The position numbers were made by a program, and so were the translations under genes. A stretch of DNA of 64,000 nucleotides from Bugula neritina (lineage: Eukaryota > Animalia > Bryozoa). The notes beneath the pieces were generated by a model that saw nothing but the letters and a program-made list of their open reading frames with translations, did not search any database and was not told where the DNA came from. Shown here in pieces: positions 1,334 to 36,511 of the stretch (its first letter is position 1; each line of letters opens with the position of its first letter). The stretch is taken from assembly GCA_964035545.1 (NCBI GenBank), contig OZ037772.1, positions 9,980,818 to 10,044,817 of the forward strand, written 5' to 3'.

Positions 1334-1378
<45 letters not shown>

Positions 1379-1419: not shown

Positions 1420-1496
<77 letters not shown>

Positions 1497-1500
1497 ATAA
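1..1500. repeat. Segmental duplication unit head, copy 1 (homologous to about 15600-17500)
   Basis: Long collinear similarity in the order (AG)n, unique sequence, (CA)n, (TA)n. Weaker homology continues (1860-2900 vs 21123-22400). Confidence 0.9.
56..112 (-). other. Putative exon of an antisense (head-to-head) gene, MSSSVGIVQPEESDSN
   Basis: Pyrimidine tract plus AG acceptor and a G|gtacgt donor; conserved in the duplicate at 15666-15722. Confidence 0.4.
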
Positions 1501-4052: not shown

Positions 4053-7000
4053 ATGGATTTGTCTGTTTCCAAAAAAAGACCACCAGCGAAGACAGACTCA
4101 GATTTATTAGGTGAGAGAAGATTTTGCTAAATAGTTACTGCTTATTTACCTTAATTAGTCTAGAGTAAGTTGTAGGCCGTCATTTTTCTTGTGTTAAAGT
4201 CTTTTATTTTCCCACTTGGTGATTTCTATATGCAGTTTTTACAAATCCAGGCTTTGGATCAAATTTGTTACCTGTAATTGTACAGCCATATAGTGCTGAT
4301 ATTTTACTCTACTGGTTTATGATCCCTGGGAGGTTTGGCCTGTACTGTGCAAGATTCTCAGGTAAAAACACCTCTGGTTTGTGGAAAGTGAATCATTGTT
4401 TCAAGCTCAAATTATGGAAATGCGGCAACAGCGTTGATTCACCGCTTGAAGAAATTAGTTAATTAGTTAACTGAGCTACTATAGTTACTAGACCAGGTCA
4501 TGTAATGGTAATCATAATCTTACATGTAATGCTTCTGTTTAGTTACTTCTAGTTTAGTAAATTCAATGTGTTTTTATTTCAAATTCAATCTATAATTTAT
4601 TATTGTACTGACAGCACATGATGCTTTTGGTGCAGAGCTTCCAGTGGATTTGTCTACTTCCGCAAAGAGACCAAAATTGCAGAGTAACTCCAATATAGCA
4701 GGTGAGAGATGCTTATATTGATGAGTATTTACACTTTCTGAAAGATTTTTTGAATTTAGGCTTTGAATAAAATTTGTTACCTGCGGGTTTATCTCTGAGA
4801 AGTTTGGTATACTGAGCAAGAATGTTAGACAACACAGCTTTGGGTTCTAAAAATTGTTTGATGCACAAGTCATAAAAGTCCAACATTGTTGAATCACTGC
4901 ATATAGAGAAATTAGTTAATCAGTTAACTGAAGAAAGTGGTCATTATAGTAGAGTAGTAATTTCTAGACCAGGTCATGTAATGGTAATCATAATCTTATT
5001 GGTAATGCTTCTGTATAGTTATTTCTAGTTCAGTAAATTCAATGAGTTTTTATTTTAATTTAAATGTATAGTTCATAATTATATTGACAGCACATGGTGC
5101 TTTTGGTGCAGCAACTCCTGTAGGTTCATCTACTTCTGCAAAAAAACCAAAACTGCAGAGTAACTTGAGTTTAGCAGGTGAGAGAGGCTATTGCTTAGTA
5201 TTTACACTTTTTTGAATGAGTTTGAAACAAGAATGAATTTTAATTTTTTTGGTGTGTTTTTTATCACATAGGTACTACTGCTTCTCATGCTGGTACATTG
5301 AAATTTACTAAATATGTCCTTCCCAAAGGTATTTGCTTCTCAAACATTAAGTATAATATGTTAGTGCCAAACAAAAATGTTATGTTAATGCAAAGTGTAA
5401 TAGTAAAAGAACACAAATGCATGTGCATTACCATTATGTATTTGTCAGTACCGCATAATAAGGCTCTGGGTTCTGGATCCTTTGGAGCAGTATTTACTCA
5501 TGTTGACAAAATCACTCAAGTGCTGGCAGTGAAAAAGGTTGACCTTGGCATGGTTACCAGCTCCTCATATCAAAAGGTAGACCATATAATTATACAGAAT
5601 ATTGTAGAACAATTTTGCGAACTTAACTAATTGCAATGACTGCATGTTTATTGTTTGATTGGATCTTCTGAGTAAAAGTGGAACATCACACATTCCTTTG
5701 GTTTATTTGTCGGACACTAGCTCCTCTCAAAGTAAGACAACCCTAACTAAATCAATATATTAATTCTTCCAGAATTTAAAAATTATTTCATAATATAAAA
5801 AGATAATTAACATTAGTTCAGTTTCAATTATTGTTTTGCACCCGTTTTAACTGGACTCACTATATTTTCAAACTTTATTCAAAAATAAGAATAAATATTC
5901 ATTCAGTTTGTCTCAATTTATTTTGTTAATTTTAGTTTGTTTGGTCAAAACTTGTGGTACAACCAATCCACGTTTCCTGTAAACATGTAAATGTTGTATT
6001 GTGTGATCTCATGGTATAGTAGACACAATAATCACTTACACATACTAGTCTAGTAAATTTAGTCTGCTTTACAACCAACTACAAAACGATTTCTAGGAGG
6101 AATAAATCTATTTTCTTGATGCAAAGTGCTAACACTAGAAAAGTAATGAATTTTTAACACATAAATTCAGAGCAATAATTGAATATAATTATTCAATTAG
6201 TTGAATTTAATTTTGAGTATTCAGTTTTTAGCTGGACATCAACTGGATTGTACTCAAAGCTTATTTATTTTAACTGACTATGTTGGTATATTTATCAACA
6301 CTTCGTTATTCCATGGAATGGTTTTTTAGGAAATTGATCGTGCAATGAAGGAAGTTAAAATGATGGAGAAGTTGAAACATCATCATAGAATAGTCAGCTA
6401 TATCAAGCATGAGTTGATTTCACATGAGATATTTCATGGTATAACATTATATTTTGGTGGCAATCACCTATCATATTATCTAGAAGTATGCTTACATATA
6501 GAAAACAATATCAATGAATTTATGCTGATATTTTAGTGAAATAATTACTACATCAATAGGGATTTTAGTACCTACTTAATACCATTGTCATATGCATGCT
6601 GTTTACAACCTCATACTCATTAACCGTAATTTAAACGAATTATTTTCACTATTTTTCCAATTGTTTAAATTAGAGATTTATACTCTCTTACTGTCACTGG
6701 TCGCCTAATTGTTTCTTTTTCCTAAAATACCTGCATATTATCTCATAATATCAGTGTCAGTAGATTTATCAACATCTTCACTTCTTGTGGTAGACAAGAA
6801 GATTCTGTGTATATACATGGAGTACATGCCTGGGGGCTCAGTGAGTGGTCGGCTAGATTCATCTGGTGCCTTCTCTGAAAAGGAAACGAAACGCTGCATG
6901 CGTCAGATTCTGGAGGGTATTTCTTATCTTCATAGCAGACGTGTGATACACAGGGATGTGAAAGGTGACTCTAGTTCTTTTTTTATTGAAACCGAATTTT

Positions 7001-10000
7001 AGCAACATTTCAAAAGATCTGTTTGAGTTACCTAAACTGCCTTTTTATTTTACCAATTGTATTTTTCAGGTTCAAACATTTTATTTGATGCTAATGATGA
7101 CCTCAAACTGGTTGATTTTGGTGTATCAAAACAGTTGAATGAACTTTCTACATTCTCAGCCCGTACAAACACCGGCCAGATAGGAACTGCTAAATGGATG
7201 GCGCCAGAGGTTGTTGCTGATGACAAATACAGTAAAAAAGCTGATGTTTGGTTCGTGTTTGTTGTTAAATATACAGTTGCACTACAAAACCTCAGAAGTT
7301 GTCAACATTAATTACATATTTGAACTGAAACAATATTTTGCATACATAACAGTTTAAAAAATTAACACACTTACTACAGCATCTTATTGAAATAGTTTAT
7401 ATTCTAAGAAGTTTTAAAACGTACAGGATATCAAACAAACTGATCAAACATTAATTGAAAAGCTTTAGCTATAGTTATAGAACTATCTTCAAGTAGTAAA
7501 ATGGTTCTAAAGTAAAAACTTTAGAGTCTCAAGTTAGGCGGTTGATTACTTGATTAGCAAAACACTTAAGCATTAGGTTTATCCAGGGTGCTTTTCATGT
7601 ATGTGTAGTCTTTTCTAGTGTTTTTCTTGCTAATATATTGTAGGAGTGCAGGAGCTACAATGGTAGAAATGCTCACAAAAAAACCACCGTGGCCCAAATT
7701 GAAATCAGTTCAATGGACATTTAAGATTAACCAAAAGCAAAAGCCAGAATATACTCTGCCCCCATCAACTAGCCAGACAGCCCGGAACCTTCTAACTGAC
7801 ATATTCAACTATGATGACAGAATTCGACCCACTTCAGAGCAGTGTTTGGGCCACCCTTGGTTCAAGACACCAGAAATAGATAACCCTGGTGGTAAAATCG
7901 ATTAAATACTGTTGTTTCCGAAAAATTGTATTATTTAAGTTGCAGCCTTTAGTGTGAAGTCTCTTTCTACATGTATAGTATGAGAGCACAACTTTCATTG
8001 TAACTTGTATACTTTGTGTGGTGTTTGGTTAGCCCTCAGTAAGTTCAACCTCAACATGTCTGATGTGGTAGTATAATATTAACAAAGGGCGAACTTCACT
8101 CTGATAATATTAGGTTAGTGCTGCAAATATTCAAACTTTTCCATATTTACAACAGGACAATCATGTAGCTAAAAGTTTTATTTAGAGGCAAATTTTGACT
8201 TGAAAAAATGTTTGTGACACTTTTATGGGCTTTATTAAAACTTAGACCTACTCAAGCTGCCATATTACAGGTCAATTAAAAAAGTTTGTGTGAGTTGTGC
8301 AGCAACGTCCCAAAAAAAGCCTAGCCTATCAGATTGTAGAACAAAAATGTAAAAAAGTTATTTTGTTTCAATGCTAAGGGCTGCAGCACAAGATTTAAAC
8401 CAACACTTTGCCGTTGCTATCTTCTGTTTAATTATTATAATTAGCAATTACTGATTGCCTATTTTCAAAATATTTTTTGTTGAAATTGCTTATGCTGTCT
8501 TAGTTGTTCATAGTTATTTCGAACGTGTTGCATCTGCTTGTCTGCATTGGTGTCACCGTAGGTGATGCTGTGGTACTTTAAATAATTAATTTGTTGTATT
8601 TATACTAGTCAAATGTGATTATCACATATATATCTATATCTGAAGTGTTGTAGTGATATGTTCCATAAATCTCCTTGAGAAAAATTTCAATAATTAGAAA
8701 TTTTCCATCATTAGTTATCCATATAAGTCTTCCAGTTATACACAATTGATCCAGCCTATGCAGTGCAGCTGTGTGTATACTGCTTGATATGCCTGCTTCT
8801 TTTATAGCCTTTGTGTTCTTTGCAGCCTGTAGTCTATGTTATGTTTGTTTTTAGTGTGTTCAGTTCAGTTAGTTCCGATCTGTTTCAACAGTCTATAATT
8901 CATCAATATTCATTTTTTCATGGCATCCCGTTTCTACTATTTTGAATAAGTGTATCTAGCTAAGATATATATATATATATACATTATTCCATATTTTAGT
9001 AGCATATGATAAACCCTCTACTTCAATCATTAGATCAGGTCTATTTCAAAATCTTTGAGTACAGTATTTATAATAATATTGTCAACTCTGACAAGTGCTC
9101 ACAAAGTAAAATTAAAATACTTTTAGGTATGTTACAATTTCAGGAAACGTCACTAAAACTAGCATAAGCTCTTACAACTCTAATTCTCACCAGCAATTTT
9201 GTATATTGGAATGCAGCGTTTAATAAGCAGGCTTATTGATATAGTAAAGCACCTAATATTACATCTCCCTCATTCTTTCATTACACAATGACTTTGAAAG
9301 GGGAATGGGGATGTACATAGGACCACTTTTATACTCTTATATAATTTTCTTATTACCAATGAGTGCTATATTCACTAAACCATGCAACTCATTGTAATTC
9401 TTCACATATTACTTTTGTTAATATATAGACAAGAAGATGGAGGTGGAGAAGGAACCTGTAGCTGAAGGCAGTGCAAGTATCTCCTCTGAACAAAGATCAC
9501 CCCCTATAGCTATAGAACTAATAGAAACTGTATCTATTGAAGAAATCGTGTGTTCCGTTCATATGTATAATGGCATTACATATGTTGGCTGTGACAATGG
9601 TGTAAAGAGAGTCAACAGAAATAATAGAGTAGCTGAGAACTTTCTTTTTCGTATTGAGGACGGCGGCTTTGTGTTCAGTATCTCAGTACATAATGATAGG
9701 ATATACACTCTGTCTTCTGGCTTTACTGTAAGAGTTCATAACCTTGAAGGGAGGTCCATCACCAGCTGGACTCATACAGATGATAAATTAAAGTTGGTAA
9801 ATAATCTTGCCATCATAAACAACCAGATAGCTATTCCCAACAGGCTAAATAAGACTCTAATATTCTACTCTCTGAATGGGGAGGTAGTAAAAACTTTACC
9901 CTGTCCTCTACTCACTGATACTTTTGTACGTCTGTCTGCTGCAGATAACAACTCAATTATTATATCTCAGCATGACTCATCTCTAGTATCTAAAGTAGAC

Positions 10001-10477
10001 ATCACATCAGGTGACATTATCTGGCAGTGTAAAGAAGTGACTAATCCTGATGGAGTGACCTGCTATAGAGATGAGTTTGTATTTGTGGCTGTTAGTATAT
10101 CACTCTGTGTACTATCATTGCATACAGGTTGGTTACTGCAGATATTTCAGGTTATGCATGGTCAGTACTGTGTTGACATACAGATGTCTATTGTACACAT
10201 TGATATTTATTATGGTGATATTGATACTTAAGATGTACATGTAAAGAATTTATTCTTTTCGTATATATACATTCTACAGTTTATTACATTATTTGATAAT
10301 AATTTAGAAAGATCAACAATTATTTTTTGTGAAGAGTATACATGTAAGTACTTCACAGGCAGGCTCCTACACAGAATTCCTTCCCATGACATGATATCTG
10401 ATCTACACATAAATGGCTCTACTCTAGTGATAGCCAGAATGATTGAAGGAAAAGTGGATTTCTATAAAATAGAATAA
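4053..10477 (+). CDS. MEKK2/3 (STE11 MAP3K)-like Ser/Thr kinase fused to a C-terminal NHL-like beta-propeller, copy 1 (about 660 aa, 12 exons)
   Basis: Phase-compatible GT-AG exons: 4053-4110, 4615-4701, 5091-5177, 5272-5328, 5449-5576, 6330-6438, 6794-6964, 7070-7250, 7644-7891, 9000-9038, 9429-10127, 10359-10477(TAA). Intact kinase motifs GSGSFG, LAVKKV, KEV, MEYMPGGS, RQILEG, HRDVKGSN, DFG, GTAKWMAPE, ADVWSAG, VEMLTKKPPW, which closely match the MAP3K2/3 pattern. The propeller exon has repeated beta-strand blades (SISVHNDRIYTL, TVRVHNLEG, LAIINNQIAIP, PDGVTCY). The start codon and the kinase-to-propeller splice are inferred. Confidence 0.8.
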
Positions 10478-11390
10478 AGGTAAACTCAAGTAGTGTGAGG
10501 AAATGATAGGCTGCTATATCTGTTGCTATAAATAGCCCGTCAATCATATATCTATTACTTAGTATAGGGTAACTTGTTCGTACTCTATGGCTGCGTGTTC
10601 TTTCTACCCTGTAATATTTGCCAATGTTTGCTAGCTTAGTTTTGTTAACTTTATAACTCAGAGCTATAAACAATTTTTATATTCAGTTTAAACAGTCCAA
10701 TGTTGAACAGTTTTACATGCTAGTGTAGGGTGATAGGCAGTACAGTGATATAATTATAAACAAAGCTCTGCATTTTCATTCAAAAATCATTCCAACTTTA
10801 TTCAATACTGGAGCTCAATACTTATAATTTAAATGTTCCTCTGCTTTAGAAATTGGAATTCTGCATGGCGTTGAAGATACTTGTTTGATGAGCCAAGAAG
10901 TGTTTCTTTTTTCACTTTCATAGACAGATGACTCCTTAGAAATTCCACAACAACTCTCAAGTTCCACATTAAATGTTAATTTTATGCTTTTGCATTATTC
11001 CGAGCTTTAGGGTTTCTAAGCTACATATTATATTGACAATGTATTTGTAGAACCATGCAGTCTAACTTTAGTTATATGGCCTCACGGAGCTGTAGAATAT
11101 TTTATATTATATAACATTGTAAATGTGTGCGATTTAATTATAACCATACGTCTATTCTAGTGCCTTATTTAGTTTCCAATAACGAATTTTTTCAATTTCT
11201 TTTCAGTAAAAATTTTTTAGTGAACTTTTGAATAAAATTTATTAGTATAAATGCTATACATTTCTTTCGAGAAACACACAGGGTGCGATCAACATGTTAA
11301 CTGTATATAAATATGCTTATTTTGTCAACTTATGATTTCTGTTCTTCTTTCTCCAGGCATATAGATTATAGATTCCAAATTATATTCAGC

Positions 11391-11500
<110 letters not shown>

Positions 11501-14374: not shown

Positions 14375-17501
<3,127 letters not shown>

Positions 17502-18232
17502 TATTATGTTACTTTTCAATTTATTTTTACCCACACATTAACTCTAATATATTATGTTATATAGTGCACAGGATGTAATATGATAACATGCATACTATAT
17601 GTCATACTGCATTCTTTTTTCAACAACATGGATTGCAAGTCTCAAACACTAGCAATATGATTCAGGGAGTGTAGTATAATGATGTTTACAATTGCTGAGT
17701 TATTTATATACCTAACAGTAATATGCTATTAATACATATGATGTCATAGATTTGTGCTTTATTCCTATGTTATATACATATATGTCTTGCACTCATGATC
17801 TGAAGAAGTTCTCTCTCTGCTGTCAAGCTGTATACTTTATACTTTACAATAATAAACGTCGCGATACATTATTCCAATGGTCTCATCTTAATCAATACCC
17901 ACGCAAATGTACAACAAACAAGAAACATTACAGGGAGGGCATAAATATAATTACGGAACAGATTAAATTTCATGGTAATGTAAATATGAATTGATATCTT
18001 CATAAAAGCTTCAGTATATAAAAGCTTACATAGTAGATGTAGTGCTATATATCCGCGAACTATTGTATATCATTAGCTGAACAAGAAAGAGTCTTTCGAA
18101 AAATAAAAATCAATACAAAACAATGCAAAGCAACCAATGAAGTCAATACAATTACAATGAAGGTAGTCAGCCGTTTTGTTTTAAGGACATTTATACCATC
18201 ACTGGTAACTCAACTAGCGTCAATGTAATTGT

Positions 18233-21122: not shown

Positions 21123-21890
21123 ATTATTGCATTGACTCCCTCAACTAGCATTGATGTGTGCAATGTATATTGATTTTTTTCTATTAACAAGCTTTTTGAA
21201 CAAAGAAAATCTACCAATGGATTTCTTTTTGTTCAACAAATTACATGCAAAAGTTCACAAGTATATTGCACTATAAGCTTTCACTGCCTGTGTTTTTTGC
21301 AGTAGATGGTATTTAATTGAGTTGCATCAAGTCTTCTATATGGTGGTGATAGATTGGAATAGCTGCAAGTGAAAGTTGATTTTTATTGCTGATATTTCCT
21401 GCATTTATCTATTGCAACTGTTGATGAGTTAGCAGTTCACTTTAATTTGTAAAAGTTACTCTGCATAATTAAGTCTGCACTACATTCTACATTCTATGTA
21501 AACTATAGGTTTACAAAAGCTTTGTGTTTATGGTGGGGATGCATCTGTCACGAATGACAACTCATGGCTATAACGCTTCAGTCAACATCTGTGATGTTTT
21601 TGTTTGGTGGCATGCGTTTATGACTTAGGTGACCACCATGAATTTTTGAGCTTTCTTATTTGATCCTTTTAATTTTTCCTATTTTGATATAATGTGCAGT
21701 GATGAGCTTACCCAGAGGTCTTGGGTTTGCACCCCAGTGAGGGCAATTATTTTACAAGCTACTTCAGTGTAGTGTAGTAGTACACCAAAGGAGTTGCGTG
21801 GTCAGGGAGCCTGACAATTGAAAGAGTAGTAAATAGGCCAGTAGAGTTCTTGAAAACGTAGGTGGGATGTAGTGTTGAGTTTGCCCAGCA

Positions 21891-21962
21891 GCCCCTGTGG
21901 TGTAATTGGTTAGCACACTTGCTTGCAAGCCAGAGGTCTGTAGTTTGAATCCCAAAGGGGCA
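21891..21962 (+). pseudogene. tRNA-like pseudogene or head of a second SINE family
   Basis: GCCCCT/AGGGGC acceptor stem, A-box TGGTGTAATTGG, B-box-like GTTTGAATCC; the T-stem is unpaired. A second 3'-half copy lies at about 21711-21745. Confidence 0.5.
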
Positions 21963-24619
21963 AATATTTCCATAATCATCATTTCAAATACCACTAAAAC
22001 CAACTATAGTTATATGTTTTTGAATCATCGTACATAACATATCACCTTATGAGATAGCTATATATTTAGAGTGAGGTAAATTAAAAAATAAACAAACAAA
22101 TTGCGCTGAGCAAAAGTTGGATCTTATAGATTTTGGTTCCACTCTACTTCCGTCCTTATGTACATGTCGGCTTCATAGTTATTCCCAAATCTACAACCAA
22201 AACTTTTGAAAATAAAGGTTTAATTGTACAACACATACTACAACCCATGCTAAGCTCTCAATTCCTGAGGGTAAATCCTTAACAACAAAGCAAAGTTATT
22301 ATTTATACCATTGCATGTAGTCTAAATTGTATAATAGTTATGTTGATATGTTGCCATCATTATTTTCCTGCTGCAAATTAATTTTTTAATACTACATTAA
22401 GCCTTGTTTTTGCCATAAGTACAAGAAGAAAATAGCAATTTTCATAAGTTAAACAGTCTAAATGTTAGAATTTTAAAAAATTTAGCTGTATTTTAATTCA
22501 TAAATTCAAAATATTACTGCATTGTGAAGCAACTTATAACATTATTTATGAAGTTGTTAAAAAACTGTAAGCTTGCTATAGCAGTTTATATGCTTAACTT
22601 CACATTTACACAATATAAATGATGTATGGTCATTTTTATGTGCTAGTTTTTAGCTTATTCGATATCTGTTGATCCAATGTTATCAATGTCTATCTTTAGG
22701 TGTTTCCCTTTAAAAGATTGCAAGAGAAAACGAATTTTCATTGAGACAAAAGATGGCTTCTTCTAGTATGTATTTGTGTGGTCTTATAAATTTTTGTGCC
22801 AGCATTGCATTTTGTGTATATATAATATTTATGCATTTTTACCTTTTTTACCTAACTCATCTAATCATTTCTTTATAACCCTATACATTAATTTGATACC
22901 CACTCACTTGACTTAATTTAAGTGCTAAGCTAGTTTCTACACACATTCTCTGTAAATCTTTATAAAACTATCACAGGCAATAATTCGGATGAAGATATTT
23001 TCCCTCCTGTTAATAAGAAGCAAAAACATCAATCAGGCTTGTCCACATTTAACACAATAAATTCACTTTTTATCACAAAAACCTTTGCTAACGGCATCCA
23101 ATGTAAAAAGTGAAATCAGTTATTCAATTTTTAAATCGAAAGACAAAAATAAGTATTAATAACTATTGTTTCACAGCTTTTGCATTTATCACAGTTTTAC
23201 TCTATCAAAACTACTATAATCTAGAGATTTTGTAGCTGCACAGAATAAATTGTGCTTTACAAAATGTGTTTTGTAATATTTTCTAAATATTTCCACCTAA
23301 TATTTGGTCAACTGCTACAGGTTTATATCATTTTCTTGATAAACACTATTTCGATGAACGCTCCTCCTCAGATGATGAATACACATACCTTCCATCCCAA
23401 TACCGAGCATTAAACAATTCACCTTCTTTTGCCAAGCAGAACCGGTTCTACAACTTTTATTACTAAATACTTTAAACTATCATTAACTTTGACAATAATT
23501 ACGGCTCATCACATCGGCTAAATATAGCTCGCACAAAATACATCTAGAACAACTCCCACTCAGTTTGTCTCAAGCTTTATATGACACTGATTTTGTACTG
23601 CTTAAACTTGTAAAAATAGATCATAATCACTGCGCGGAATAAATTGAAAATATGAATGCACACAAGGAAGCACCTATAAATCAAACTATTAAAATTTAAT
23701 AAAATGTTGAATCACAATTTGCTAAAATACATAGGCAGTAAAAGGATACTTCAAGTATTGAAATTAATTAGATTAATTCTTAAAGTTTTGGATTAAATTA
23801 CTGAAATATTATTACTTAATTTATAACTATAGCAGTGTTTTTTGTGATAATAGAAATATTAATCTCATGCATATTATTAATCAGTTCTGACAACATTGAA
23901 GCAAACCTCTTAGGACATTTAATTTAATATGATGATTGTTTATTGGTAATATTAATTTAAATACCATTTTTAGATTAATTGAGAACTTATATGTATTATA
24001 ATAATTTAGATAGAAAACTGCTTGGCATTGGCTCCTTTGGGTCAGTATACAGAGTGCATGACACTATAAGTAAAGGAATACTGGCTGTTAAGACAATCGA
24101 CCTCGGTCTAGTGGAAAGCTCTGAGTATGAACAGGTATAGCAAGAAACTGCCAAACTTCATTAGTAACACAATAAAACACTTTACCATATAGCATCGATG
24201 CTGCAACAGTGAGTTCTTTTTATAAAAATACTTCCATATTTTTGTAGTCACAATTAATACTTTCGAATTACTGTTTACTTTGTGCTTAAAATGTAATTTA
24301 TTTTTAGAACAATACTAAAGCCATGAAAGAAGTTGAAGCAATGGAACAACTAAAACATGAGAGAATAGTTCAATATATCAGACATGAAGTGAAACATGAT
24401 GACCGTGTCCCAGGTATTCGTCTTGTCAATTATTTCTCCTTCAAAGATTTGTGTATTTAAAAATATAAATGTCAACATTCAAATTTTTACATTGTGCTCA
24501 TTTTATATCTGACCAGTGCAAAATGTTTCTTTTTATGTGTATGTTTTCTGCTTATGTTGATTATTGGTCGAGTTTTACTTAAAAAAGTAATGTAAAACAA
24601 TTTTTTAAAGCTGGGCTAA

Positions 24620-25040
24620 ATAGGGCCTAAATGTGCTGAACATTGTGAGTGCAGAAAAAATGCAAAAGAGGCCTAAATGTGCTGAAAAATGACTAAGTTT
24701 GCTAATATTTGCTGAAAAACGATTAAGCATGCTGAATAATGCTGAAAAGTGCCTAAATGTGTACTAAAAAAAAGGTTAGAAAGTGCTATGAATTGCTATA
24801 GTGTTTGAATGGGTTAAAAAATGCCTAAATATGCAAAAATAGTGCTGGAAAGTGCTTAAATGTGCTGAAAAATGCTAAAGTGCATATATAGACGTGCTAA
24901 CATTAGTTGATTAATGCCTAAATCTGCTAAAAAATGTCTAAATCTGCTGATATTTGCTGAAAAACGATTAAGCATGCTGAATAATGCTGAAAAGTTTGTA
25001 AATGTGCTAAAAAATGCTAAATGTGCTACAAGGTGCTTCA
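24620..25040. repeat. Degenerate about 20-bp tandem repeat
   Basis: Recurrent CCTAAATGTGCTGAAAAATG. Confidence 0.7.
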
Positions 25041-25225
25041 AGTAATGTGTTAATTGGTCTCAAATAAAATGTTTATATTGCTGATAAGTCTGTTTAAACT
25101 GAAAATGTAAGGGAATTTTGAAAAATGAGTAAAATTGATCTGAAGGCTATATTTCTTGAATGAATGCTAAAAACAAAGAACAATCCTTAACTGGATTCGG
25201 ATCATTATGCAATTTCATCTTTCAA

Positions 25226-28134
25226 CACAGTTAGTTTAAGGTCATTACTTTCCAGATGCAGGCACTGCTTTATGTTATATATAAACGGTTTCCAGGGGAT
25301 AGCTCGAACAGTTTTTGTCTCACATTAACAAATTTTACATGAAAAGATAGCTCTTGCATTCTTCTTTCATATACTTTTTTAATTTTTCAATAAAAATTTT
25401 TTTGAGAAAGTTGCTGCATAATAAGTAAAATTTTACACCCTCCATGTTCCACTGCTGTAGCACAGGGGATTCATTTTATAAAGTCTAAAAGTTAAACTTG
25501 ACATTCCTTAATATGTTTTCTCTAATATACTTTCTTTGTTTTTTGAAATTCTGTTTATGCTCTTCACAATTTGGTAAAAACATACACCATTTTGCAAGTT
25601 TCACTGCAATTATCTAAATTCTTCATATGGTGGTTCTAGCTACGCTCCTGTGACTAATTATAACATTCCTAGTACGTTTGCCGCTCTGCGCTATCACAAT
25701 AACATATAGTACCCTCTCGCACAAATTGGCAATCTATTGGATTTCTGCCAATATAATGTTCCCTGTTTTACATTAGCACTTAGCTGAATCATCTCACTAT
25801 GTTACAATCTATTGACAATGCCTCAGCACAACATAATTCTTTGTTTGTTTGGCAGAGTTAATTTCAGCTAAATCACTTCACTTTGCAGTCTTGTCAGTAA
25901 AGGTCTGTCTATAGTGCAGCAGTTGTACTTCCAGTTTCTCTAATTCACATATGATTATTTTAAGTACATTGTATTCTATAAGATCAATTTAAAGTTTAGC
26001 CCAGTGTTCAGTAGCTAAGTATTATGCATGTATGTTGTCTTACTGTTGAACAAAAGTTAAAAAAAACTTTACAATTATAGCCATATTTATTATACATGCG
26101 TAGGATTTGCATAAATTGACAAAAAAAAATGCAGCATACTAGGATTGAACCATGACCAACCAGCTTCTCGCTGACGCCTTTAACCTCTAGACCACGCAGT
26201 CACCGTTAATAAATTGTCAACTATATGAGTAACTATGAGTACATAAATATTTTGCGCGCAAATGGGTTATAATTATTAGGCTGTCAATTCATGTTGATAG
26301 CAGTCAACTGTTGCAATAGTCTCGGGTAAGCCTAGGGCCACACTGTGCGTATTTTCGCATGCGAAAATTAAAATCACGGGTAGCAAAGGTGTCCACTGTA
26401 GCGTCAGTGATGCGTGATAAATAAAGCTTTCATTTTTAAATCGCACTCGCTTTCAATAAAACGCAATTTACTGGAATGTAGGGCTAAAATAAAGAAATTG
26501 GGCTCGCTTAATAATACCAGCCAATTAGGTGACGACGACAGAGACGATTCGCACTTGCGTTGAAAATGCAGAGCGACAAGTGCGAATGTTTTCTCAACGC
26601 GCACAGTGGACACCTTTGCTACTTGTGATTTCAATTTTCGCATGCGAAAATACGCGCCGTGTGGCCCTAGGCTTACTAGCAAAGCTAATGGTTTTGAACA
26701 AATAACCCAAAAGTTTAAAAATAAGTAGCTTGCGTATTACTAGCTACAAAAACAGGTCTGAAATAGACTGGTAAAGCAAGCTCTTATTGTAGAGTTTGCA
26801 GATGTGCTCTAAAATAAAACTCAAACTGTATGCTATTACATAAGTATTTGTATGCGAGAGATATAAATGGACATTACTGAGTTTCTGGAAAACAACATAC
26901 TTGAAGTTAACTTTGACAATGGTGTTTTCTTTTCATCATAGCTAGCCTATAGCATAAATCTCTAATCATATGAATCTTTATGAAGCCCACAGCTCATGTA
27001 AGGGTGGCAATGTAATTTGAAACGAACAATTATGTTGCTGCATTGTGTCTAAGGTATATTAGAGAGCAGAATTTGGTTTTACTAGCCTGCCCCAACGGCA
27101 TTCTACAATGCAGCTTATATGCTGGCAGTTGTAATAAGTACAGCCGATAGCAAGGTTACTATCACTGCTAGCTCTGTGCAGTATGTAACCTCTTGAATAA
27201 TTGCGGCAATTTTAAACTCTTGGAAGTTGGCCAAGTTATCATATCGCAGCCAGCCACCGGAAACAAAGCTTCAGAGCTATTCATATAATATTATACTGAT
27301 GCACTTGGTAGCAGAGTGGCTAATCTAATATAGTTCATAGTTCAACACCCTTTACTTTGGGAATACAGCCTCTTTTTTTAGGTTTACCTTACAAAGCATG
27401 AACATATCTAAACTGATATTCTGATAATTTAGAGGTACATTTTGAAAACTAGGTTAATTGCACTTGTTTGCACAACAACAATAATAAAATAGATATTATG
27501 CAGTATAATAAAAACACACATAATACTATATAATATATTATAATGATAATAATATAATATTATAAGTACCATTACTGCATTTTATAAATCACATGGTTGC
27601 CAAAAAAATGTATCACAAATTTTGTAATTATACATCAAAAATAGAACTATAGCTAGGCAGCAGGTTAGAATAGAGTAAATTTTTAAAACATGAAATCATG
27701 ATTTGACTATTGTTTTATTTAGGCCAACCAACCTAGGAGTACAAGATTGGGTTTTAGCTGACAGTTTATAACATTTAGCTTTTGAGCCAGCAGCACTGGC
27801 ACTTGTGAAGTATAGGCAAAGTTAGTGAAGCGAGACTAACAAGCACTCAAATACAAGGCATATTGAGACGCAATAACAAGTCAGGAGCGTATAAATTGAA
27901 AAGAATGTGGAAGGGGGACTATGTTTTTCAACAAGCTATAACTTAAACATGAATTGGCTTTTGAAAAAAATAAAAAAGTATATTGGAGAACATAAGTTTC
28001 TTTATCTTTTTATATTTTTTTTGTTCCTGTGACATTCAACCTGTTCGAGCTATCAGTGGAACATTGTTCATATAGAACATAAAGCACCTGGCAAAGAGCC
28101 AGAAAATGAAAAGTGTGACCTTAAACTAACTGTG
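25226..28134 (+). mobile_element. Non-autonomous TIR DNA transposon (CACAG termini, 2-bp TSD; CMC/EnSpm-like), copy A
   Basis: TIR CACAGTTAGTTTAAGGTCA...TGACCTTAAACTAACTGTG; TSD AA/AA; no transposase ORF; lies in an intron of kinase copy 2. Confidence 0.85.
26329..26673. mobile_element. MITE nested in copy A (Harbinger-like or TA-targeting)
   Basis: About 70-bp imperfect TIRs AGCCTAGGGCCACAC...TTTTCGCATGCGAAAA...GTGTCCACTGT, flanked by TA (or TAA/TTA). Absent from copy B at the equivalent site (about 31415). Confidence 0.85.
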
Positions 28135-28371
28135 AATTTGCTTGAGCCATAAAACTACATTATTAAGTAATGGTGTCATTATTCACCATATATTTAATAT
28201 ATTAGAAATTATCATACTATATTATTGCATGTTCAATAACTGATCACAGAATGGAGAGCCTGCACTTTGACTGAGATTTAACATTTCCATGTTTTCACAG
28301 TGTAATTTTTCCCAATGACATAATAATATTATGTCAACATGTAAGTCACACTGTGAAAAACAATTAGAAAA

Positions 28372-28562
28372 CTCATGCAAGTTTATAGTCACTATCCCTG
28401 TGAAAAAACCTCTAACGGAAAGGCTAAGGAATCATTTAAATATAGTACAGAAGCTGTTGTGACTGAATGCTTCTACTAACATCATCAATGATATTTGTCA
28501 ATGTGCAAACCCATGACCTCTATTTACTAAGCATGTGCTCTAACCCCTAGACCATGGCTACT
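28372..28562 (-). mobile_element. Degenerate SINE copy
   Basis: Family similarity (CTAACCCCTAGACCA, CAAGTTTATAGTCACTATCCCTGTGA). Confidence 0.65.
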
Positions 28563-29946
28563 CTGTACTTCAGGAAATAAAATGCTGTAAACTATTTAGA
28601 TGGTAATTAAAGCATGGACCTGCAGAAGATTCTAATATGTACTGCCAGATAGTATAGTACCCAACAGTTTTTTTATCTATCAACATGCTTTCACATGTTT
28701 ATAACAGAAAAGACGGTATTGCATATTTACATGGAGTACATGGCTGGAGGGACAATAAGCAAGCGTCTAAATTCTTCTGGCCCCTTCACTGAAAAAGAGA
28801 CCAAACGATGTATGAGACAAATACTGGAGGGCCTGGCATATCTTCACGGGCTAAATATATTACACCGGGATGTCAAAGGTGAATATTGTTTCTGGAATGT
28901 AGTAATTATATCTTCTGTTGAAAAGATTTTTTTGCTTATTGTATCAGTTTTTCAATATTGATGTTTAATATGAGCTGTAATCAAGGAGTGGAAATCTGTA
29001 TTGGTGAGAGAATAAAAATGCAGCATGTATTTGATTAAGTGAAGATTATTGCAAATTTTCTTTTATAGAAAGTTTTGCAAATTTCCATTTTTAATTTGAT
29101 ACTTGTTTAAAATAAATGCTGTAGTGTTTGCTATATTTTTATTTACCTTTTTCCAACAGCTAAATTTTATTTACCATTAGTAATTAATGTCATGACATTG
29201 ACTATTCATATCAATTTAAGCTATTAGTGCTATTTAGTGCTATAATATTGGTAAAATTGAGTAAAATGGAAAAGAAAGAAAAATTTCAGACTTGGTAATA
29301 TAAACATGAGTCCGATTCTGAACTTTCTCCCCGTATAGAGCTTCACCACATACCATAGTTTACTCAGTATCACCACAAGCCTTATATCAACATATGTTGC
29401 AGGTTCAAACATTTTATTTGATGAGAATGACAACATAAAGCTGTCAGATTTTGGTTTATCCAAACAGTTGAGCAATCTCTCTACATACTCCAGTACAGCA
29501 GCCAGAACCAACACAGGTCTTGTTGGAACTGCAAACTGGATGGCGCCTGAGGTTTTTGCGGAGAAGAAGTATGGCGTAAAGGCTGATATTTGGTACATAA
29601 CATAAGCATACATTGATATTGAATTATGCATTACACATGCCTGTGATAATATTCTTATTATTTATTGGTAGGAAGTATTAGCATGGTATGTAGTTGCTAT
29701 ACATACATTACATCATCATGTATCGCTGTTACACAAATTATGCCTGATTTAAAAAAAAACTAATATCACTTTTATTATTTAGATGTCATCATCAGAAACA
29801 ATCCCATGTCAAGTAAAACACTACATCTTTTAATGATGACACATGAAATCACAATGTTGTCAAACATGGCTGGAGTTGTCATTTTTAAGCAGTTTGATTA
29901 CTCTTTTAAGTAATATTGTCGAACATTTTAACTACTAAATTGCAGG

Positions 29947-32503
29947 CACAGTTGGTTTAAGGTCATACTTTTCATTTTCTGGCTCTTTGCCAGGTGCTTT
30001 ATGTTCTATATGAACAATGTTCCACTGATAGCTCGAACAGGTTGAATGTCACAGGAACAAAAAAAATATAAAAAGATAAAGAAACTTATGTTCTCCAATA
30101 TACTTTTTTATTTTTTTCAAAAGCCAATTCATGTTTAAGTTATAGCTTGTTGAAAAACATAGTCCCCCTTCCACATTCTTTTCAATTTATACGCTCCTGA
30201 CTTGTTATTGCGTCTCAATATGCCTTGTATTTGAGTGCTTGTTAGTCTCGCTTCACTAACTTTGCCTATACTTCACAAGTGCCAGTGCTGCTGGCTCAAA
30301 AGCTAAATGTTATAAACTGTCAGCTAAAACCCAATCTTGTATTCCTAGGTTGGTTGGCCTAAATAAAACAATAGTCAAATCATGATTTCATGTTTTAAAA
30401 ATTTACTCTATTTCTAACCTGCTGCCTAGCTAGTTCTATTTTTGATGTATAATTACAAAATTTGTGATACATTTTTTTGGCAACCATGTAATTTATAAAA
30501 TGCAGTAATGGTACTTATAATATTATATTATTATCATTATAATATATTATATAGTATTATGTGTGTTTTTATTATCCTGCATAATATCTAATTTATTATT
30601 TTTGTTGTGCAAACAAGTGCAATTAACCTAGTTTTCAAAATGTACCTCTAAATTATCAGAATATCAGTTTAGATATTTTCATGCTTTGTAAGGTAAACCT
30701 AAAAAAAGAGGCTGTATTCCCAAAGTAAAGGGTGTTGAACTATGAACTATATTAGATTAGCCACTCTGCTACCAAGTGCATCAGTATAATTTTATATGAA
30801 TAGCTCTGATGCTTTGTCTCCGGTGGCTGGCTGCGATATGATAACTTGGCCAACTTCCAAGAGTTTAAAATTGCCGCAATTATTCAAGAGGTTACATACT
30901 GCACAGAGCTAGCAGTGATAGTAACCTTGCTATTGGCAGTACTTATTACAACTGCCAGCATATAAGCTGCATTGTAGAATGCCGTTGGGGCAGGCTAGTA
31001 AAACCAAATTCTGCTCTCTAATATACCTTAGACAAAATGCAGCAACATAATTTTTAGTTTCAAATTACATTTGCCACCCTTACATGAGCTGTGGGCTTCA
31101 TAAAGATTCATATGATTAGAGATTTATGCTATAGGCCCTATCTGTGCTAGTGTATGATGAAAATAACACACCATTGTCAAAGTTAACTTCAAGTATGTTG
31201 TTTTCCAGAAACTCAGTAATGTCCATTTATCTCTCGCATACAAATACTTATGTAATACCATACAGTTTAAGTTTTATTTTAGAGCACATCTGCAAACTCT
31301 ACAATAAGAGCTTGCTTTACCAGTCTATTTCAGACCTGTTTTTGTAGCTAGTAATACGCAAGCTACTTATTTTTAAACTTTTGGGTTATTTGTTCAAAAC
31401 CATTAGCTTTGCTAGTAACCCGAGACTATTGCAACAGTTGACTGCTATCAACATGAATTGACAGCCTAATAATTATAACCCTTTTGCGCGCGAAATATTT
31501 ATGTAATGATAGTTACTCATATAGTGCGCGTCTTATAAACGATGAATGCGTGGTCTAGAGGTTAGAGGCGTCAGCGAGGAATTCTGTTTTGTCGCAATTT
31601 TTTTTGTCAACTTATGCAAATCCTACGCATGTATAATAAATATGGCTATAATTGTAAAGTTTTTTTTAACTTTTGTTCAACAGTAAGACAACATACATGC
31701 ATAATAATTAGATACTGAACACTGGACTAAACCTTAAATTGATCTTATAGAATACAATGTACTTAAAATAATCATATGTGAATTAGAGAAACTGAAAGTA
31801 CACCTGCTGCTCTATAGACAGACCTTTACTGACAAGACTGCAAAGTGAAGTGATTTAGCTGAAATTAACTCTGCCAAACAAACAAAGAATTATGTTGTGC
31901 TGAGGCATTTTCAATATATTATTGTAACATAGTGAGATGATTCAGCTAAGTGCTAATGTAAAACAGGGAACATTATATTGGCAGAAATCCAATAGATTGC
32001 CAATTTGTGCGAGAGGGTACTATATGTTATTGTGATAGCGCAGAGCGGCAAACGTACTAGGAATGTTATAATTAGTCACAGGAGCGTAGCTAGAACCACC
32101 ATATGAAGAATTTAGATAATTGCAGTGAAACTTGCAAAATGGTGTATGTTTTTACCAAATTGTGAAGAGCATAAACAGAATTTTAAAAAACAAAGAAAGT
32201 ATATTAGAGAAAACATATCAAGGAATGTCAAGTTTAACTTTTATACTTTATAAAATGAATCCCCTGTGCTACAGCAGTGGAACATGGAGGGTGTAAAATT
32301 TTACTTATTATGCAGCAACTTTCTCAAAAAAATTTTTATTGAAAAATTAAAAAAGTATATGAAAGAAGAATGCAAGAGCTATCTTTTCATGTAAAATTTG
32401 TTAATGTGAGACAAAAACTGTTCGAGCTATCCCCTGGAAACCGTTTATATATAACATAAAGCAGTGCCTGAATCTGGAAAGTAATGACCTTAAACCAACT
32501 GTG
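29947..32503 (-). mobile_element. Same element, copy B, inverted relative to copy A
   Basis: TIR CACAGTTGGTTTAAGGTCAT...ATGACCTTAAACCAACTGTG; TSD GG/GG; near-identical reverse complement of copy A without the nested MITE. Confidence 0.88.
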
Positions 32504-33949
32504 GGAGTGCTGGAGCAACGATGGTGGAGATGTTGACTAAGAAAGCTTTATGGCCAACCCTGGAAACATTTCAGCTAATGTATAAAATTTCAAAAAATGA
32601 CCCACCACAATATGACCTTCCTCAATCTGTTAGCAGTGAAGCAAGAGAACTATTGGATGCAGTCTTGATCTATGATCAGGGGAGAAGACCAACAGCAAAA
32701 CAGCTGCTTAATCACTGCTTAATCAGTATGGCGTTTACATATAAAGCCAAGACACAATTTCATGTTAATATAGATAGCATACAGCATTAACATCAATTAC
32801 TACATGTACATGAAATAATGAAATAAATGAAATAATACATTTATTAATATTTAATTAAGCAACTGCATGTTTACACAGCTATGACAAAAATATGTGTAAA
32901 ATTTTGCATTACTAATTGAAAGTTTTAAAACCTTGCAAACATATACATAAAAAGTTTTCCATGCAATGAATCACCAGAGTCTGTAATCAAATTTCTCTCT
33001 AGCCTTATATATAACTTTGGCTCTGAAATTCACCTGAGTCAATGTTAACTCCACTAAATGCATAGGTCTTTTCCTTCATCACTCCAACTTTGAAAGAGCA
33101 TAATTGGATGGACTAGAAAACCTACTTGTTTATAAGTGTATATTTCAACAACCTTTTGAGTTTCAGATTGATTTTCTGCTAAATGAATTTTATAAGCGTG
33201 TACTCCATTGTTTAATTCATGCATCCAAGTTCGTGTTTGAAACTTCATAACCATGAGGCTTCTTTTACAGAACCACTACCACCCAAGTCCGTAGAGGTGA
33301 TAAACTCTGTTGAAGTTTCTCCAAATTGCCACTCTGTGTACGCGTATAAAGGTGTCACATATGCTGGGTGTGATGAAGGTGTAGACAAAATAGATGAGAA
33401 CAACAAAGTTACTAAATCATTCATATCTATTAAAGGTAAAGAGGTGGTGAGTATCTCAGTACATAATGATAGGATATATACTCTGACTACTGATTCAACT
33501 GTGAGAGTTCATGACCTTGAAGGGAAGTTCGTCACCCGCTGGACTCATACAGAGAAACTTAACTGGACATGCCAGTTTGCCATCATAAACAATCAGATAG
33601 CTATTCCGGACAGGCTGAATAAGACTCTAGTCTTCTACTCTCTGACTGGGGAGGTAGTAAACACTTTACCCTGCGCTCTAATTACGGTTGCTGCTGTATG
33701 CCTGTCTGCTGCAGATAACAACTCAATTATTATATCTCAGCCCGACTCATCCCTAGTATACAGAGTAGACAACTCATCAGGTGACATCCTATGGCAGTGT
33801 AAAGATGTGGCCCAACCTCATGGAGTGACCTGCTATAAAGATGAGTTTGTACTTGTCGCTGATGATACTGAACCTACCACACTCTGCGCACTATCATTGC
33901 ATACAGGTTGTGGATAAATGTTACAACAATACACATATCACAAGTCAAT

Positions 33950-34020
33950 ATATGTGTGTACGTGTGTACATGTGTGCGTGTGTAGGTGTGTAGGTGTGTG
34001 TGTGTGTGTGTGTGTGTGCG

Positions 34021-34059
<39 letters not shown>

Positions 34060-34134
34060 AGGTATATGTATATAGGTGTATATATATATATATTCACATG
34101 TATATCTATGTATATGAACACAGATTGATACATA

Positions 34135-34166
<32 letters not shown>

Positions 34167-34170
34167 GATA
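33950..34170. repeat. (GT)n/(TA)n compound microsatellite
   Basis: Direct inspection. Confidence 0.9.
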
Positions 34171-36511
34171 TGTTATCTGCATGCATACAGACATAAATTA
34201 TCATAATGCATGCCTAAGTCCTATGCTTTTATAATCTGTAAATTTATAAGTAGCTTTTTTTAGATTATATTTTACAAATAACTTTATATTTTCCCAGTAT
34301 TTATGTGTACAGCAGTATACTATAATTTAGTCATTACATAAAATAATACTTATATGTGCCAAGCATTATATTTTAGGAGAATTACTATCCAGAATATCTG
34401 TTGGAATAATCGACACAATACTTGATTTGCATATTGCTGGCTCCACTCTGGTATTACCAAAATACCTTGCTAAAACGGTTGAGTTCCATCAGCTGAAATG
34501 AACGTTAGGGAAAATGTAAACACGAGGGCACCGAGGAGAAAACTATGAAAAATGTAAAACGAATATTTATATATAAGTTCGTGACATAATAGTTATTGTT
34601 TGCTAAAAGTAGTCTCATGTAGTATTTATATGACTAATAACATAGTTACCTATTGTTTACTTGAATAAAATTATTATTTATTATTTTAGCCATTAACAAA
34701 CTAGCTTGACATTACATGTTATTTACTCTTCACTGTGGAAAGAAGTTCTTAACACATAATCTATTTATTCATTTTGAAAATAGATTCAACACTAGATAGA
34801 TAGATAGATCGAATTAATATGGTTTAATTTTTTATAGGGCTGGAAATATTATTTTGAAAAAACTGAGCAAATTAAAAACATTTCAACAACAGATGGGTTT
34901 TTTAAAACACTTTAAACTAAATCAATAATGCCTGCGTGCTGTTTTACTCTTATATCTTTTTAATAGACAATTACATAATAATATGGTAATGTGTTTTTTG
35001 TTCTACTATGATATTTTGTATTTTGTTATAATTTATTGGGTTGTATTATATTTTTTATCTGATATTACACGATTTCGTAGGCACAAATCAACTGATCCTT
35101 TTTAACCTAACTGGTACAACTTACAATTGGTTTTTTTTACTGACTAGATTTGTAAGTTTAGTTTAAGTTACAATCACTTCAACCTCTATTCTAAACTTTT
35201 TATTTTTTAAGATAACGCACATTTGTAAAGCAGCATTCATTGTATAACTAAACACACCTGGGTTTCACTTAATCTTAAATTTTTAATTCCTTAACACCTT
35301 ATCATCAGTTTAATATTTGAAAGATTTGCATGTAGAGGCATTTAAATTCTTTTTCAAGATAATATAAACATTTTATAATCTTTTTAAGGGTGTGTATGGC
35401 TTGTGAGATATTGCTATATATAGACAACACGCTTATAACTTTCCAACGAGTAGCGGCTATAGTAACTTTTGTTATAATTGTCAAAAAAGCACCCAAATAT
35501 TTTATGCATGCACCAGCTACATAGAAAAACTGCAGGAACATCTATCAATACACTTATTTTATTGTTAACTAATTATTAGGTCTATTGTTTTCATAGAACA
35601 GGTTTAAAGCTTTTTTCTCATAATTTGTGAATGATTGCTAGTAGAAGTTAGCTCCTCTTTTTAACCGTGGCTTCCAAACTCAATTTAAAGGAGCAGATGC
35701 AAGTTGGAGGAGGCCAAGTTGGAACATTCGTTCTAGACTAGAAACACAATACAAAACCTGCTTCAATGAAATTTTAATTAAAAATTAAAAATTTAAGAAC
35801 TTGAGCTATTAAAATTTGTCCACTTAGCATACAAGCTTTTCCTAATTCATCTCTTACTGCAGCTGCCTTGTGTTTTCGATAGAATATCATTCGTTAAGAA
35901 GAATATATGAATTTAACTATTGGCACAAAATGCAAGTTTAACTCGCACAAAAAGAAAAGCTACAAGCAGTGCAAAACCATTTCATTACAATATTGAGTAT
36001 AGCCTTCATGAAATAAACAAGCATGCTTGAGTACAACACCATTGTTAAATATGAGAACTAATTTTTATTAAATGATACAGAAAAATGAAAATGTATTGGT
36101 TCAATTATTTATTTCAATTAAATATTTAATAACAGTATAATATGCCAATGGTCAATTCTTTCTCAGAAATAAAGATATACAAATTAAAAATTTCAGTTAA
36201 CCGGGCATTCAAAAGCAAAACGTGTGAACAACTACATACATATGGCATAACAGATACGGAAAAAAAATTTGACATAGTAAATGACTATAACAATTGGATA
36301 ACAACTGGTTTTGTGACCATTTTTCTCTAAATGACCTTGAGATAAGGTTAGTCTGTGTGACTATTTTAATCCATAAGCTAAGTCTTTCTGTAACGCAACC
36401 AGTTTCTCAGTCCCAGCTCCCCATTTACTAAACAGTCTATTCAGCTAGAAAGCAAACACACATGAGTCTAGCATGCACATTGTCTCTGCGTCTGATTGGC
36501 TGACCTATATA

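What the first reader, a model, noticed from the sequence alone, without database searches (positions are those of the whole stretch)
4053..34501. Tandem family of MEKK2/3-type kinase fused to an NHL-like beta-propeller: candidate sensor-kinase system
Seen: in both paralogs the last kinase exon has a phase-1 donor (7891; 32725) matching the phase-1 acceptor of a large propeller exon (9429; 33271). In copy 1 an optional 39-nt symmetric linker exon (9000-9038) lies between them. A homologous terminal exon follows in each copy, and the copy-1 catalytic motifs are intact. Established: MAP3K2/3 carry an N-terminal PB1 domain and end with the kinase, while NHL-type propellers usually cap TRIM (RING/B-box/coiled-coil) proteins and bind RNA or protein ligands. 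Inference: exon shuffling produced a PB1-less MAP3K with an integrated ligand-binding propeller, conceptually like plant kinase-fusion immune proteins. I do not recognise this architecture from described animal kinases.
Basis: partly seen in the sequence, partly recalled or inferred. Interest (0 to 1): 0.85.

Follow-up and report, generated by a model that had tools for sequence, protein, structure and literature searches.

The report
Stress kinase fused to variable propeller
In the bryozoan Bugula neritina, spare copies of a stress-signalling kinase (MEKK2/3) appear to have been joined to the fast-changing binding propeller of a large TRIM gene family, and elsewhere to a caspase, which would give one-piece sensor-kinase proteins; the joined RNA and the function are not yet shown.

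Summary
The coordinates hold. The genome matches Bugula neritina tzBugNeri2.1. Copy 1 gives a 660-aa, stop-free model: MEKK2/3-derived kinase without PB1, plus a six-bladed NHL-type propeller.

There are five kinase-propeller units on chromosome 8, and two are intact. The layout recurs in two other assemblies, with a conserved phase-1 donor and acceptor, unconserved read-through tails and no conserved start codon in the propeller exon. That favours one transcript. No RNA run was available.

The propeller comes from a TRIM family of at least 150 copies. It was captured at least twice and still exchanges DNA with TRIMs. Kinase dN/dS is about 0.27; propeller top-face loops show pN/pS 1.7-2.1 (pooled p about 1e-4). 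The same kinase family is also joined to caspases at two loci. The true MEKK2/3 (with PB1) lies on chromosome 1.

Best reading: a TRIM-type variable sensor rewired from ubiquitylation to phosphorylation. The function is inferred. The scan noted this architecture, the caspase fusion and the TRIM variability before on other DNA of this genome.

The parts
4053..5328 (+). Copy 1, four small 5' exons (4053-4110, 4615-4701, 5091-5177, 5272-5328): about 97 aa low-complexity N-terminus with three basic K-K/R-x-K/R-like motifs; two exons are a duplicated pair; no PB1. The true start may lie in a further upstream exon.
   Evidence: nuclear-signal reading is inference
5449..7891 (+). Copy 1 kinase domain, five exons (5449-5576, 6330-6438, 6794-6964, 7070-7250, 7644-7891); MEKK2/3-derived, catalytic motifs intact; phase-1 donor at 7891 (or 7888)
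9000..9038 (+). Possible 39-nt phase-1/phase-1 linker exon; use unproven
9429..10127 (+). Copy 1 large propeller exon (five blades), homologous to the propeller exon of the Bugula TRIM family; 3' part (9677-10138) is 87-88% identical in DNA to TRIM copies, 5' part more diverged
10359..10478 (+). Copy 1 terminal exon, inferred to complete the sixth blade; stop at 10476-10478; homologous to TRIM terminal exons
22701..23440 (+). Candidate small 5' exons of copy 2 with basic motifs; boundaries not settled
24010..29592 (+). Copy 2 kinase exons 1-4 (24010-24134, 24308-24413, 28708-28878, 29403-29592), open, motifs intact; closest to the kinase of the kinase-caspase gene on chromosome 1
25227..28134 (.). 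Intronic copy of the CACAG-ended non-autonomous DNA element, with a nested 0.35-kb inverted-repeat element at about 26326-26676
29947..32503 (.). 2557-bp CACAG...CTGTG element with 2-bp GG target duplication, inserted at the acceptor of copy 2's last kinase exon; no coding capacity (longest open stretch 70 aa); very high copy number in DNA reads
32505..32725 (+). Copy 2 last kinase exon, now without its AG acceptor; a weak in-frame AG lies 3 nt inside; phase-1 donor at 32725
33271..33906 (+). Copy 2 propeller exon; similarity to TRIM DNA (85-86%) starts at 33272, 79 nt inside the TRIM exon, right behind a non-TRIM acceptor
34377..34501 (+). Copy 2 terminal exon with stop

Best explanation
These are chimeric genes of a Bugula-specific, fast-turnover family. 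A duplicate of MEKK2/3 lost its PB1 and linker exons and gained a phase-1 donor a few codons after the kinase. That made it a portable front module. Next to a large TRIM array it was joined to the TRIM propeller exons, taking the place of RING/B-box/coiled coil; at two other loci it was joined to a caspase. Shown: gene anatomy, origin of both halves, selection on both halves, a variable top face, repeated exchange with TRIM genes. Inferred: one transcript and one soluble intracellular protein (about 85% likely). Inferred mechanism: the propeller's top face binds a changing ligand, probably foreign, as the TRIM paralogues are thought to; binding clusters the protein, the kinases dimerise through helix alphaG and autophosphorylate, and then phosphorylate a MAP2K that needs no PB1 (MKK3/6 or MKK4/7 type, so p38/JNK rather than MEK5-ERK5) or a local target. 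A ubiquitylation output is thus swapped for a phosphorylation output on the same recognition module.
For: Anatomy and phases. TRIM donor: RING, B-box and coiled-coil exons precede the homologous propeller exon through a phase-1 intron in L040, L042, L015, L016; no such exon lies between kinase and propeller in the fused loci. Fold: pLDDT 92 propeller, best profile matches are NHL domains of TRIM3, Thin, Brat, TRIM2. Selection: kinase dN/dS 0.25-0.34; propellers of two paralogues 0.21-0.31 against a related assembly; top-face entropy 1.41 against 0.56 bottom and 0.64 strands, p about 1e-6; top-face pN/pS 1.9 and 1.7 in two kinase-linked pairs and 2.1 in a TRIM pair, pooled p 1e-4. Top face = DA and BC loops = ligand face in Brat (PMC4015489). 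In copy 2 the TRIM-derived DNA begins exactly at an in-frame acceptor. Caspase sister fusions are open and in phase. MEKK2 self-activates through alphaG dimers and recruits MKK6 without PB1 (PMC12780230).
Against: No RNA junction seen. No full-length fusion protein in the databases searched. Three of five units in this haplotype carry lesions. Loss of the coiled coil removes the TRIM's own dimerising device, so how binding would switch the kinase on is a guess. The fast top face could partly be imported from TRIMs by gene conversion and not selected in the fusions. Loop boundaries were set by hand from a model, and the test is a simple pairwise count, not a site model. No ligand or expression data.
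Confidence: 0.58

Rival explanations
1. The fusion is real, but the propeller is a docking, localising or autoinhibitory module (replacing PB1) or a decoy that mimics TRIM targets, not a ligand sensor that switches the kinase on.
For: Propellers are common protein scaffolds; C-terminal propellers on kinases such as MAP4K-CNH act this way (own knowledge). Copy 1's top loops are net acidic, 6 K/R against 11 D/E. DNA exchange with TRIMs could import variability.
Against: A scaffold for a host partner should keep its face; here the top face changes faster than silent sites in two kinase-linked pairs, including L047-L048, whose propellers form their own clade apart from the TRIMs.
Confidence: 0.22
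2. Kinase and propeller are not one transcript: the kinases end at read-through stops and the propeller exons are orphan TRIM pieces or separate small genes.
For: No RNA. The canonical MEKK2/3 does end with the kinase. An AATAAA lies 32 nt after copy 2's read-through stop. Copy 1's propeller exon has an early ATG (9437).
Against: Read-through tails are unconserved while donor phase is fixed; the early ATG is absent in most paralogues; kinase and propeller are only 0.3-1.5 kb apart with no TRIM exons between; the propellers stay open and under constraint in three assemblies.
Confidence: 0.1
3. The chimeras are transcribed by-products of a recombination-prone gene array and are decaying without a selected function.
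For: Lesions in three of five units: stop and HRD-to-HRG change in one, ten copies of a 28-bp unit in another's propeller, the transposon in copy 2.
Against: The first two are intact at those sites in the related assembly L037 and show dN/dS 0.1-0.3; silent sites between copy 1 and copy 2 kinases are near saturation (dS about 2.2), so the family is old; birth and death is usual for immune arrays (own knowledge).
Confidence: 0.1

Closest known systems
MEKK2/MEKK3 (MAP3K2/3)
   Same: Best PDB match for the kinase exons (9p6a); same last three kinase exon boundaries as the genome's own MEKK2/3 on chromosome 1; catalytic motifs intact.
   Different: No PB1, no long linker, an added C-terminal domain, at least 15 derived copies. 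The true orthologue (C1:8.80-8.81 Mb) scores higher against MAP3K2 (84 against 60 bits), has a PB1-like exon and ends with the kinase.
TRIM-NHL proteins (TRIM2/3/71, Brat) and the expanded bryozoan TRIM-propeller family
   Same: Same C-terminal propeller, same exon pair and phase, same variable top face.
   Different: RING, B-box and coiled coil are replaced by a kinase. The propeller does not reach Pfam's NHL cut-off and copy 1's top loops are not basic, so RNA binding cannot be assumed.
Mycobacterium PknD (kinase plus NHL propeller)
   Same: N-terminal Ser/Thr kinase with a C-terminal six-bladed NHL propeller; its propeller is a profile hit (1rwi, E 3e-5).
   Different: Bacterial; membrane helix and extracellular propeller (own knowledge). 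Here there is no hydrophobic stretch in the linker and both halves come from animal genes: convergence.
Cereal kinase fusion proteins (Sr43, WTK4, RWT4, Pm13)
   Same: Lineage-specific kinase-plus-extra-domain genes described as immune receptors (PMC10260397; bioRxiv 2025.07.14.664643, 2025.08.26.672365).
   Different: Different kinase groups and partner domains, plants, genetically proven resistance. Analogy only.
Animal kinases with a propeller (MAP4K-CNH, LRRK2, Vps15, ASK1)
   Same: Kinase and beta-propeller in one chain (own knowledge, not tested).
   Different: Ancient, low-copy and conserved; not TRIM-derived, not known to be hypervariable.

Membership tests
MAP3K2/3 | Kinase domain closest to MEKK2/3 | tested here: met
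   MAP3K2 is the top PDB hit by a wide margin for both exons tested
MAP3K2/3 | N-terminal PB1 domain | tested here: not met
   PB1 and linker exons of the chromosome-1 orthologue find no match near any fused copy
MAP3K2/3 | Protein ends with the kinase | tested here: inconclusive
   Genomic evidence favours a spliced C-terminal domain; no RNA
MAP3K2/3 | Orthologue of MEKK2/3 in this genome | tested here: not met
   The locus at C1:8.80-8.81 Mb is the orthologue; the window genes are derived duplicates
MAP3K2/3 | Placement against MAP3K19 and other animal MAP3Ks in a tree | not tested
   No full-length outgroup sequences could be fetched with exon-sized queries
MAP3K2/3 | Catalytic activity and MAP2K phosphorylation | not testable with these tools
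   Motifs intact in copy 1; the activation loop has Gly where the orthologue has Thr, with a Thr one position earlier
TRIM-NHL | RING, B-box, coiled coil | tested here: not met
   No such exon in the fused loci; present in L040, L042, L015, L016
TRIM-NHL | Six-bladed NHL-type propeller | tested here: met
   Confident model with five blades from the large exon; sixth inferred from the terminal exon; NHL domains are the best profile hits
TRIM-NHL | Pfam NHL repeats above cut-off | tested here: not met
   No NHL hit for the window exons; weak hits in 8 of 142 relatives
TRIM-NHL | Basic top face that binds RNA | tested here: inconclusive
   Top loops 6 K/R against 11 D/E in copy 1, 7 against 5 in its nearest paralogue; no electrostatics computed
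PknD-type receptor kinase | Membrane helix between kinase and propeller | tested here: not met
   By inspection of the 660-aa model the linker is charged and Ser-rich with no 20-residue hydrophobic run; no predictor was run
Plant kinase fusion immune receptors | Confers recognition of a pathogen molecule | not testable with these tools
   Only the selection pattern is available

The most novel reading that the evidence does not exclude
Bugula has an animal counterpart of plant kinase-fusion immune receptors: a portable MEKK2/3-derived kinase cassette that is repeatedly plugged onto the ends of two large defence-type families, hypervariable TRIM propellers (sensor in, phosphorylation out) and caspases (kinase-controlled protease), and is refreshed by gene conversion from the TRIM repertoire.
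Probability: 0.4. Interest if true: 0.85.

Novelty: new variant of a known kind. Interest (0 to 1): 0.7.

Why it matters
Animal MAP3Ks are normally few, conserved and activated through adaptors. Here one seems to be wired directly to a recognition surface under diversifying selection. If the transcript is confirmed, the kinase gives a simple read-out (autophosphorylation) for finding what the large bryozoan TRIM-propeller repertoire binds, which is unknown. It is also a clear case of exon shuffling in progress: donor families, breakpoints, intron phases and dying copies are all visible in one genome. Bugula carries a well-studied bacterial symbiont, so its recognition systems are of interest in their own right.

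Tried and rejected
RNA: the one run search returned a single holder, X1, which proved to be DNA; junctions remain unseen. The joined 660-aa model was not searched or folded, as the operators' note requires; exons were searched one by one, and joined exons were used only locally for frame checks, trees and dN/dS. Searches for a stored kinase-plus-propeller protein found none: best 150 of 337 representatives, 51 close propellers, 9 Watersipora proteins near one TRIM; these are blind to most proteins of about 660 aa, so absence in Watersipora is not shown. JGI metagenome pattern scan: nothing. Pfam PB1 scan of the genome missed the split PB1 of the orthologue, so it was replaced by exon-level searches. 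A single-sequence fold failed (pLDDT 47). Foldseek did not separate NHL from WD40. AU tests did not reject one clade for kinase-linked propellers (p 0.16), so repeated capture rests on the DNA breakpoint, the dS contrast and the kinase tree. No C-terminal domain could be named for the eight other derived kinases. Helix alphaG varies more than the rest of its exon but below the silent rate. Paper searches found no description of this family.
Full report
Source. The window is G000:C8:9980818-10044817 in a genome of 216,009,554 bases and 321 contigs. Named relatives of the propeller are Watersipora subatra proteins.

The observation. Copy 1 joins into 660 aa over twelve exons with canonical splice sites and no internal stop; all catalytic motifs are present. 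Copy 2 is open in every exon, but its last kinase exon has lost its acceptor: a 2557-bp element with CACAG...CTGTG ends and a 2-bp GG duplication was inserted between the AG and the exon. DNA contigs of run X1 span both junctions with no differences, and no joint skipping the element was listed; contigs cannot prove that an empty allele is absent. A weak in-frame AG lies 3 nt inside the exon, so copy 2 is probably, not certainly, broken.

The family. Five kinase-propeller units lie within 60 kb on chromosome 8: g0 (9.960 Mb, +), gA (9.968, -), gB (9.978, -), copy 1 and copy 2. g0 is intact at 612 aa. gA has a stop and HRG for HRD; gB has ten copies of a 28-bp unit in its propeller. Both are intact at those sites in a contig from another run, about 89% identical in protein (L037). 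A second, more distant assembly has three further kinase-then-propeller contigs (L044, L047, L048) and one more kinase (L046). I take both for Bugula from their similarity; the tools did not name the organism.

One transcript? Not observed, since no RNA run was offered. The indirect case is strong. The fused copies have a phase-1 GT shortly after the kinase (codon 79-83 of the exon; 74 in copy 2) and a phase-1 AG opening the propeller exon. The tails that read-through would give differ freely, from 4 to about 50 residues. An early ATG in the propeller exon is missing in most copies. The gap is 0.3-1.5 kb and holds no TRIM exon. In copy 2, TRIM-like DNA starts at 33272, one base after the acceptor and 79 nt inside the TRIM exon, and is in frame, which is hard to explain unless that join was used. 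I put one transcript at about 85%. A kinase-only isoform may also exist (AATAAA at 32822).

Origin of the kinase. Human MAP3K2 is the best solved match. The genome's real MEKK2/3 is at C1:8.80-8.81 Mb: it scores higher, has an exon matching MEKK2/3 PB1 structures and ends with the kinase. At least 15 derived copies share its last kinase introns, show no PB1 in the DNA held, and mostly show a phase-1 donor after the kinase. Placement against MAP3K19 was not tested.

Origin of the propeller. At least 151 related exons exist in the genome, about 30 of them 62-70% identical and clustered on chromosome 8, one cluster starting about 110 kb downstream of copy 2. Long database relatives are RING/B-box proteins. 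In L040 and L042 the RING, B-box and coiled-coil exons precede the propeller exon through a phase-1 intron, followed by the same terminal exon. The exon folds as five propeller blades at pLDDT 92; the terminal exon should close the sixth (inference). A family profile ranks the NHL domains of TRIM3, Thin, Brat and TRIM2 first, though Pfam's NHL cut-off is not reached. 'NHL-like' is fair.

Repeated capture and exchange. Copy 1 and copy 2 kinases have dS about 2.2, but their propellers 0.49, and copy 2's propeller is only 0.24 from TRIM copies. Copy 2's kinase groups with a chromosome-1 kinase (support 99/96), and one clade of all propeller-linked kinases is rejected at p 0.024. Copy 1's exon starts at the ancestral TRIM acceptor, copy 2's inside the exon, and only the 3' part of copy 1's exon is 87-88% identical to TRIM DNA. 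This points to at least two captures or replacements, plus gene conversion. The propeller tree alone does not settle it (p 0.16).

A second partner. At C1:33.27 Mb and C6:13.62 Mb the same kinase is followed, in phase 1 and without stops, by six exons of a caspase with His and Cys in place; the Cys motif reads CSG where QACRG is usual, so activity and specificity are open. The caspase belongs to a family of at least 136 matches; the chromosome-1 copy is 90-94% identical to about fifteen others near which the kinase search found nothing, and 73% to the chromosome-6 copy. The two caspase-linked kinases are not one clade (p 1e-5). So the kinase behaves as a portable front module for two large families.

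Selection. The kinase is constrained (dN/dS 0.25-0.34 in most pairs). In the propeller, variation sits in the DA and BC loops: entropy 1.41 against 0.56 (bottom loops) and 0.64 (strands) over 40 close relatives. These loops form the top, ligand-binding face in Brat (PMC4015489). Top-face pN/pS is 1.89 for copy 1 against g0, 1.68 for L047 against L048 and 2.14 for a TRIM pair, against 0.1-0.8 elsewhere; Fisher p 0.014, 0.047, 0.018, pooled 1e-4. Loop limits were set from the model before the counts were seen, but this is a simple pairwise test with approximate silent-site totals.

How it probably works. Shown: anatomy, origins, constraint on the kinase, a driven binding face. Inferred: a soluble protein, perhaps nuclear (basic N-terminal motifs), whose propeller binds a changing ligand; clustering lets the kinases dimerise and autophosphorylate. 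MEKK2 does this through helix alphaG, needs PB1 to recruit MEK5, and recruits MKK6 without it (PMC12780230). A PB1-less copy should therefore favour p38/JNK-type output. The ligand is unknown; RNA is not favoured for copy 1, whose top loops are net acidic. Rivals: docking or decoy module (0.22), separate transcripts (0.10), decaying by-products (0.10).

Known or new. It works like a sensor-kinase fusion, a kind known from PknD and from cereal kinase fusion proteins, but it is a member of neither. It is a MEKK2/3 derivative, not the orthologue, and carries a TRIM-type propeller without being a TRIM. No stored protein or paper with this architecture was found, within searches that see long proteins poorly. 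Earlier scan notes on other DNA of this genome record the same architecture at g0, the caspase fusion and TRIM hypervariability; I had found the first two and measured the third before reading them, and count them as no support. Verdict: real, a new variant of a known kind, interest 0.70; the main gap is RNA.

Noticed in passing
G000:C1:33268000-33274922 (L029/L030) and G000:C6:13622900-13628500 (L031, minus strand): The same derived kinase joined in phase to a complete caspase domain; His and Cys present, Cys motif CSG.
   Followed up: yes
genome-wide: At least 136 caspase-exon matches, many in tandem arrays on chromosomes 1 and 6: an unusually large caspase family.
   Followed up: no
G000:C8:9676000-9717000, C8:9098000-9107000, C5:13898800-13905600: Eight more MEKK2/3-derived kinases without a propeller; two have DLG for DFG, two have altered HRD; the chromosome-5 copy is followed by a coiled-coil-like repeat; other C-termini unidentified.
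   Followed up: partly
window 44700-56300, minus strand: TRAF-like gene or genes (TRAF zinc finger, MATH exons) with a duplicated block, 48763-50621 similar to 52468-56262 at 88-97%.
   Followed up: partly
window 18233-21122: Decayed LTR retrotransposon between the two copies: 86% identical terminal repeats, integrase and zinc-knuckle remnants on the minus strand. Described only.
   Followed up: partly
window 1-2885 and 15603-22396: The 5' flanks of copy 1 and copy 2 are homologous (70-88%) although their kinases are distant, suggesting copy 2 is a three-part mosaic: flank, kinase and propeller from different sources.
   Followed up: partly
window 25227-28134 and 29947-32503: Two inverted copies (95-97% identical) of a non-autonomous CACAG-ended element in one gene; depth in DNA contigs is over a thousand times that of unique sequence, so it is an abundant, recently active family.
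   Followed up: partly
window 4322-4749 and 4791-5223: Tandem duplication of an exon with its intron in the N-terminus of copy 1; g0 has a single copy.
   Followed up: yes
G000:C8:9976450-9976700: Ten copies of a 28-bp unit inside the propeller exon of paralogue gB; one copy in the related assembly.
   Followed up: yes
window 56440-58331 and 60026-60337: Tc1/mariner-like remnant with inverted ends and an HTH hit; a short reverse-transcriptase-like remnant (by eye, no Pfam hit).
   Followed up: no
window 36000-43600, plus strand: A further multi-exon gene is likely; one exon at 39635-39778 looks PWI-like by eye but had no Pfam hit.
   Followed up: no
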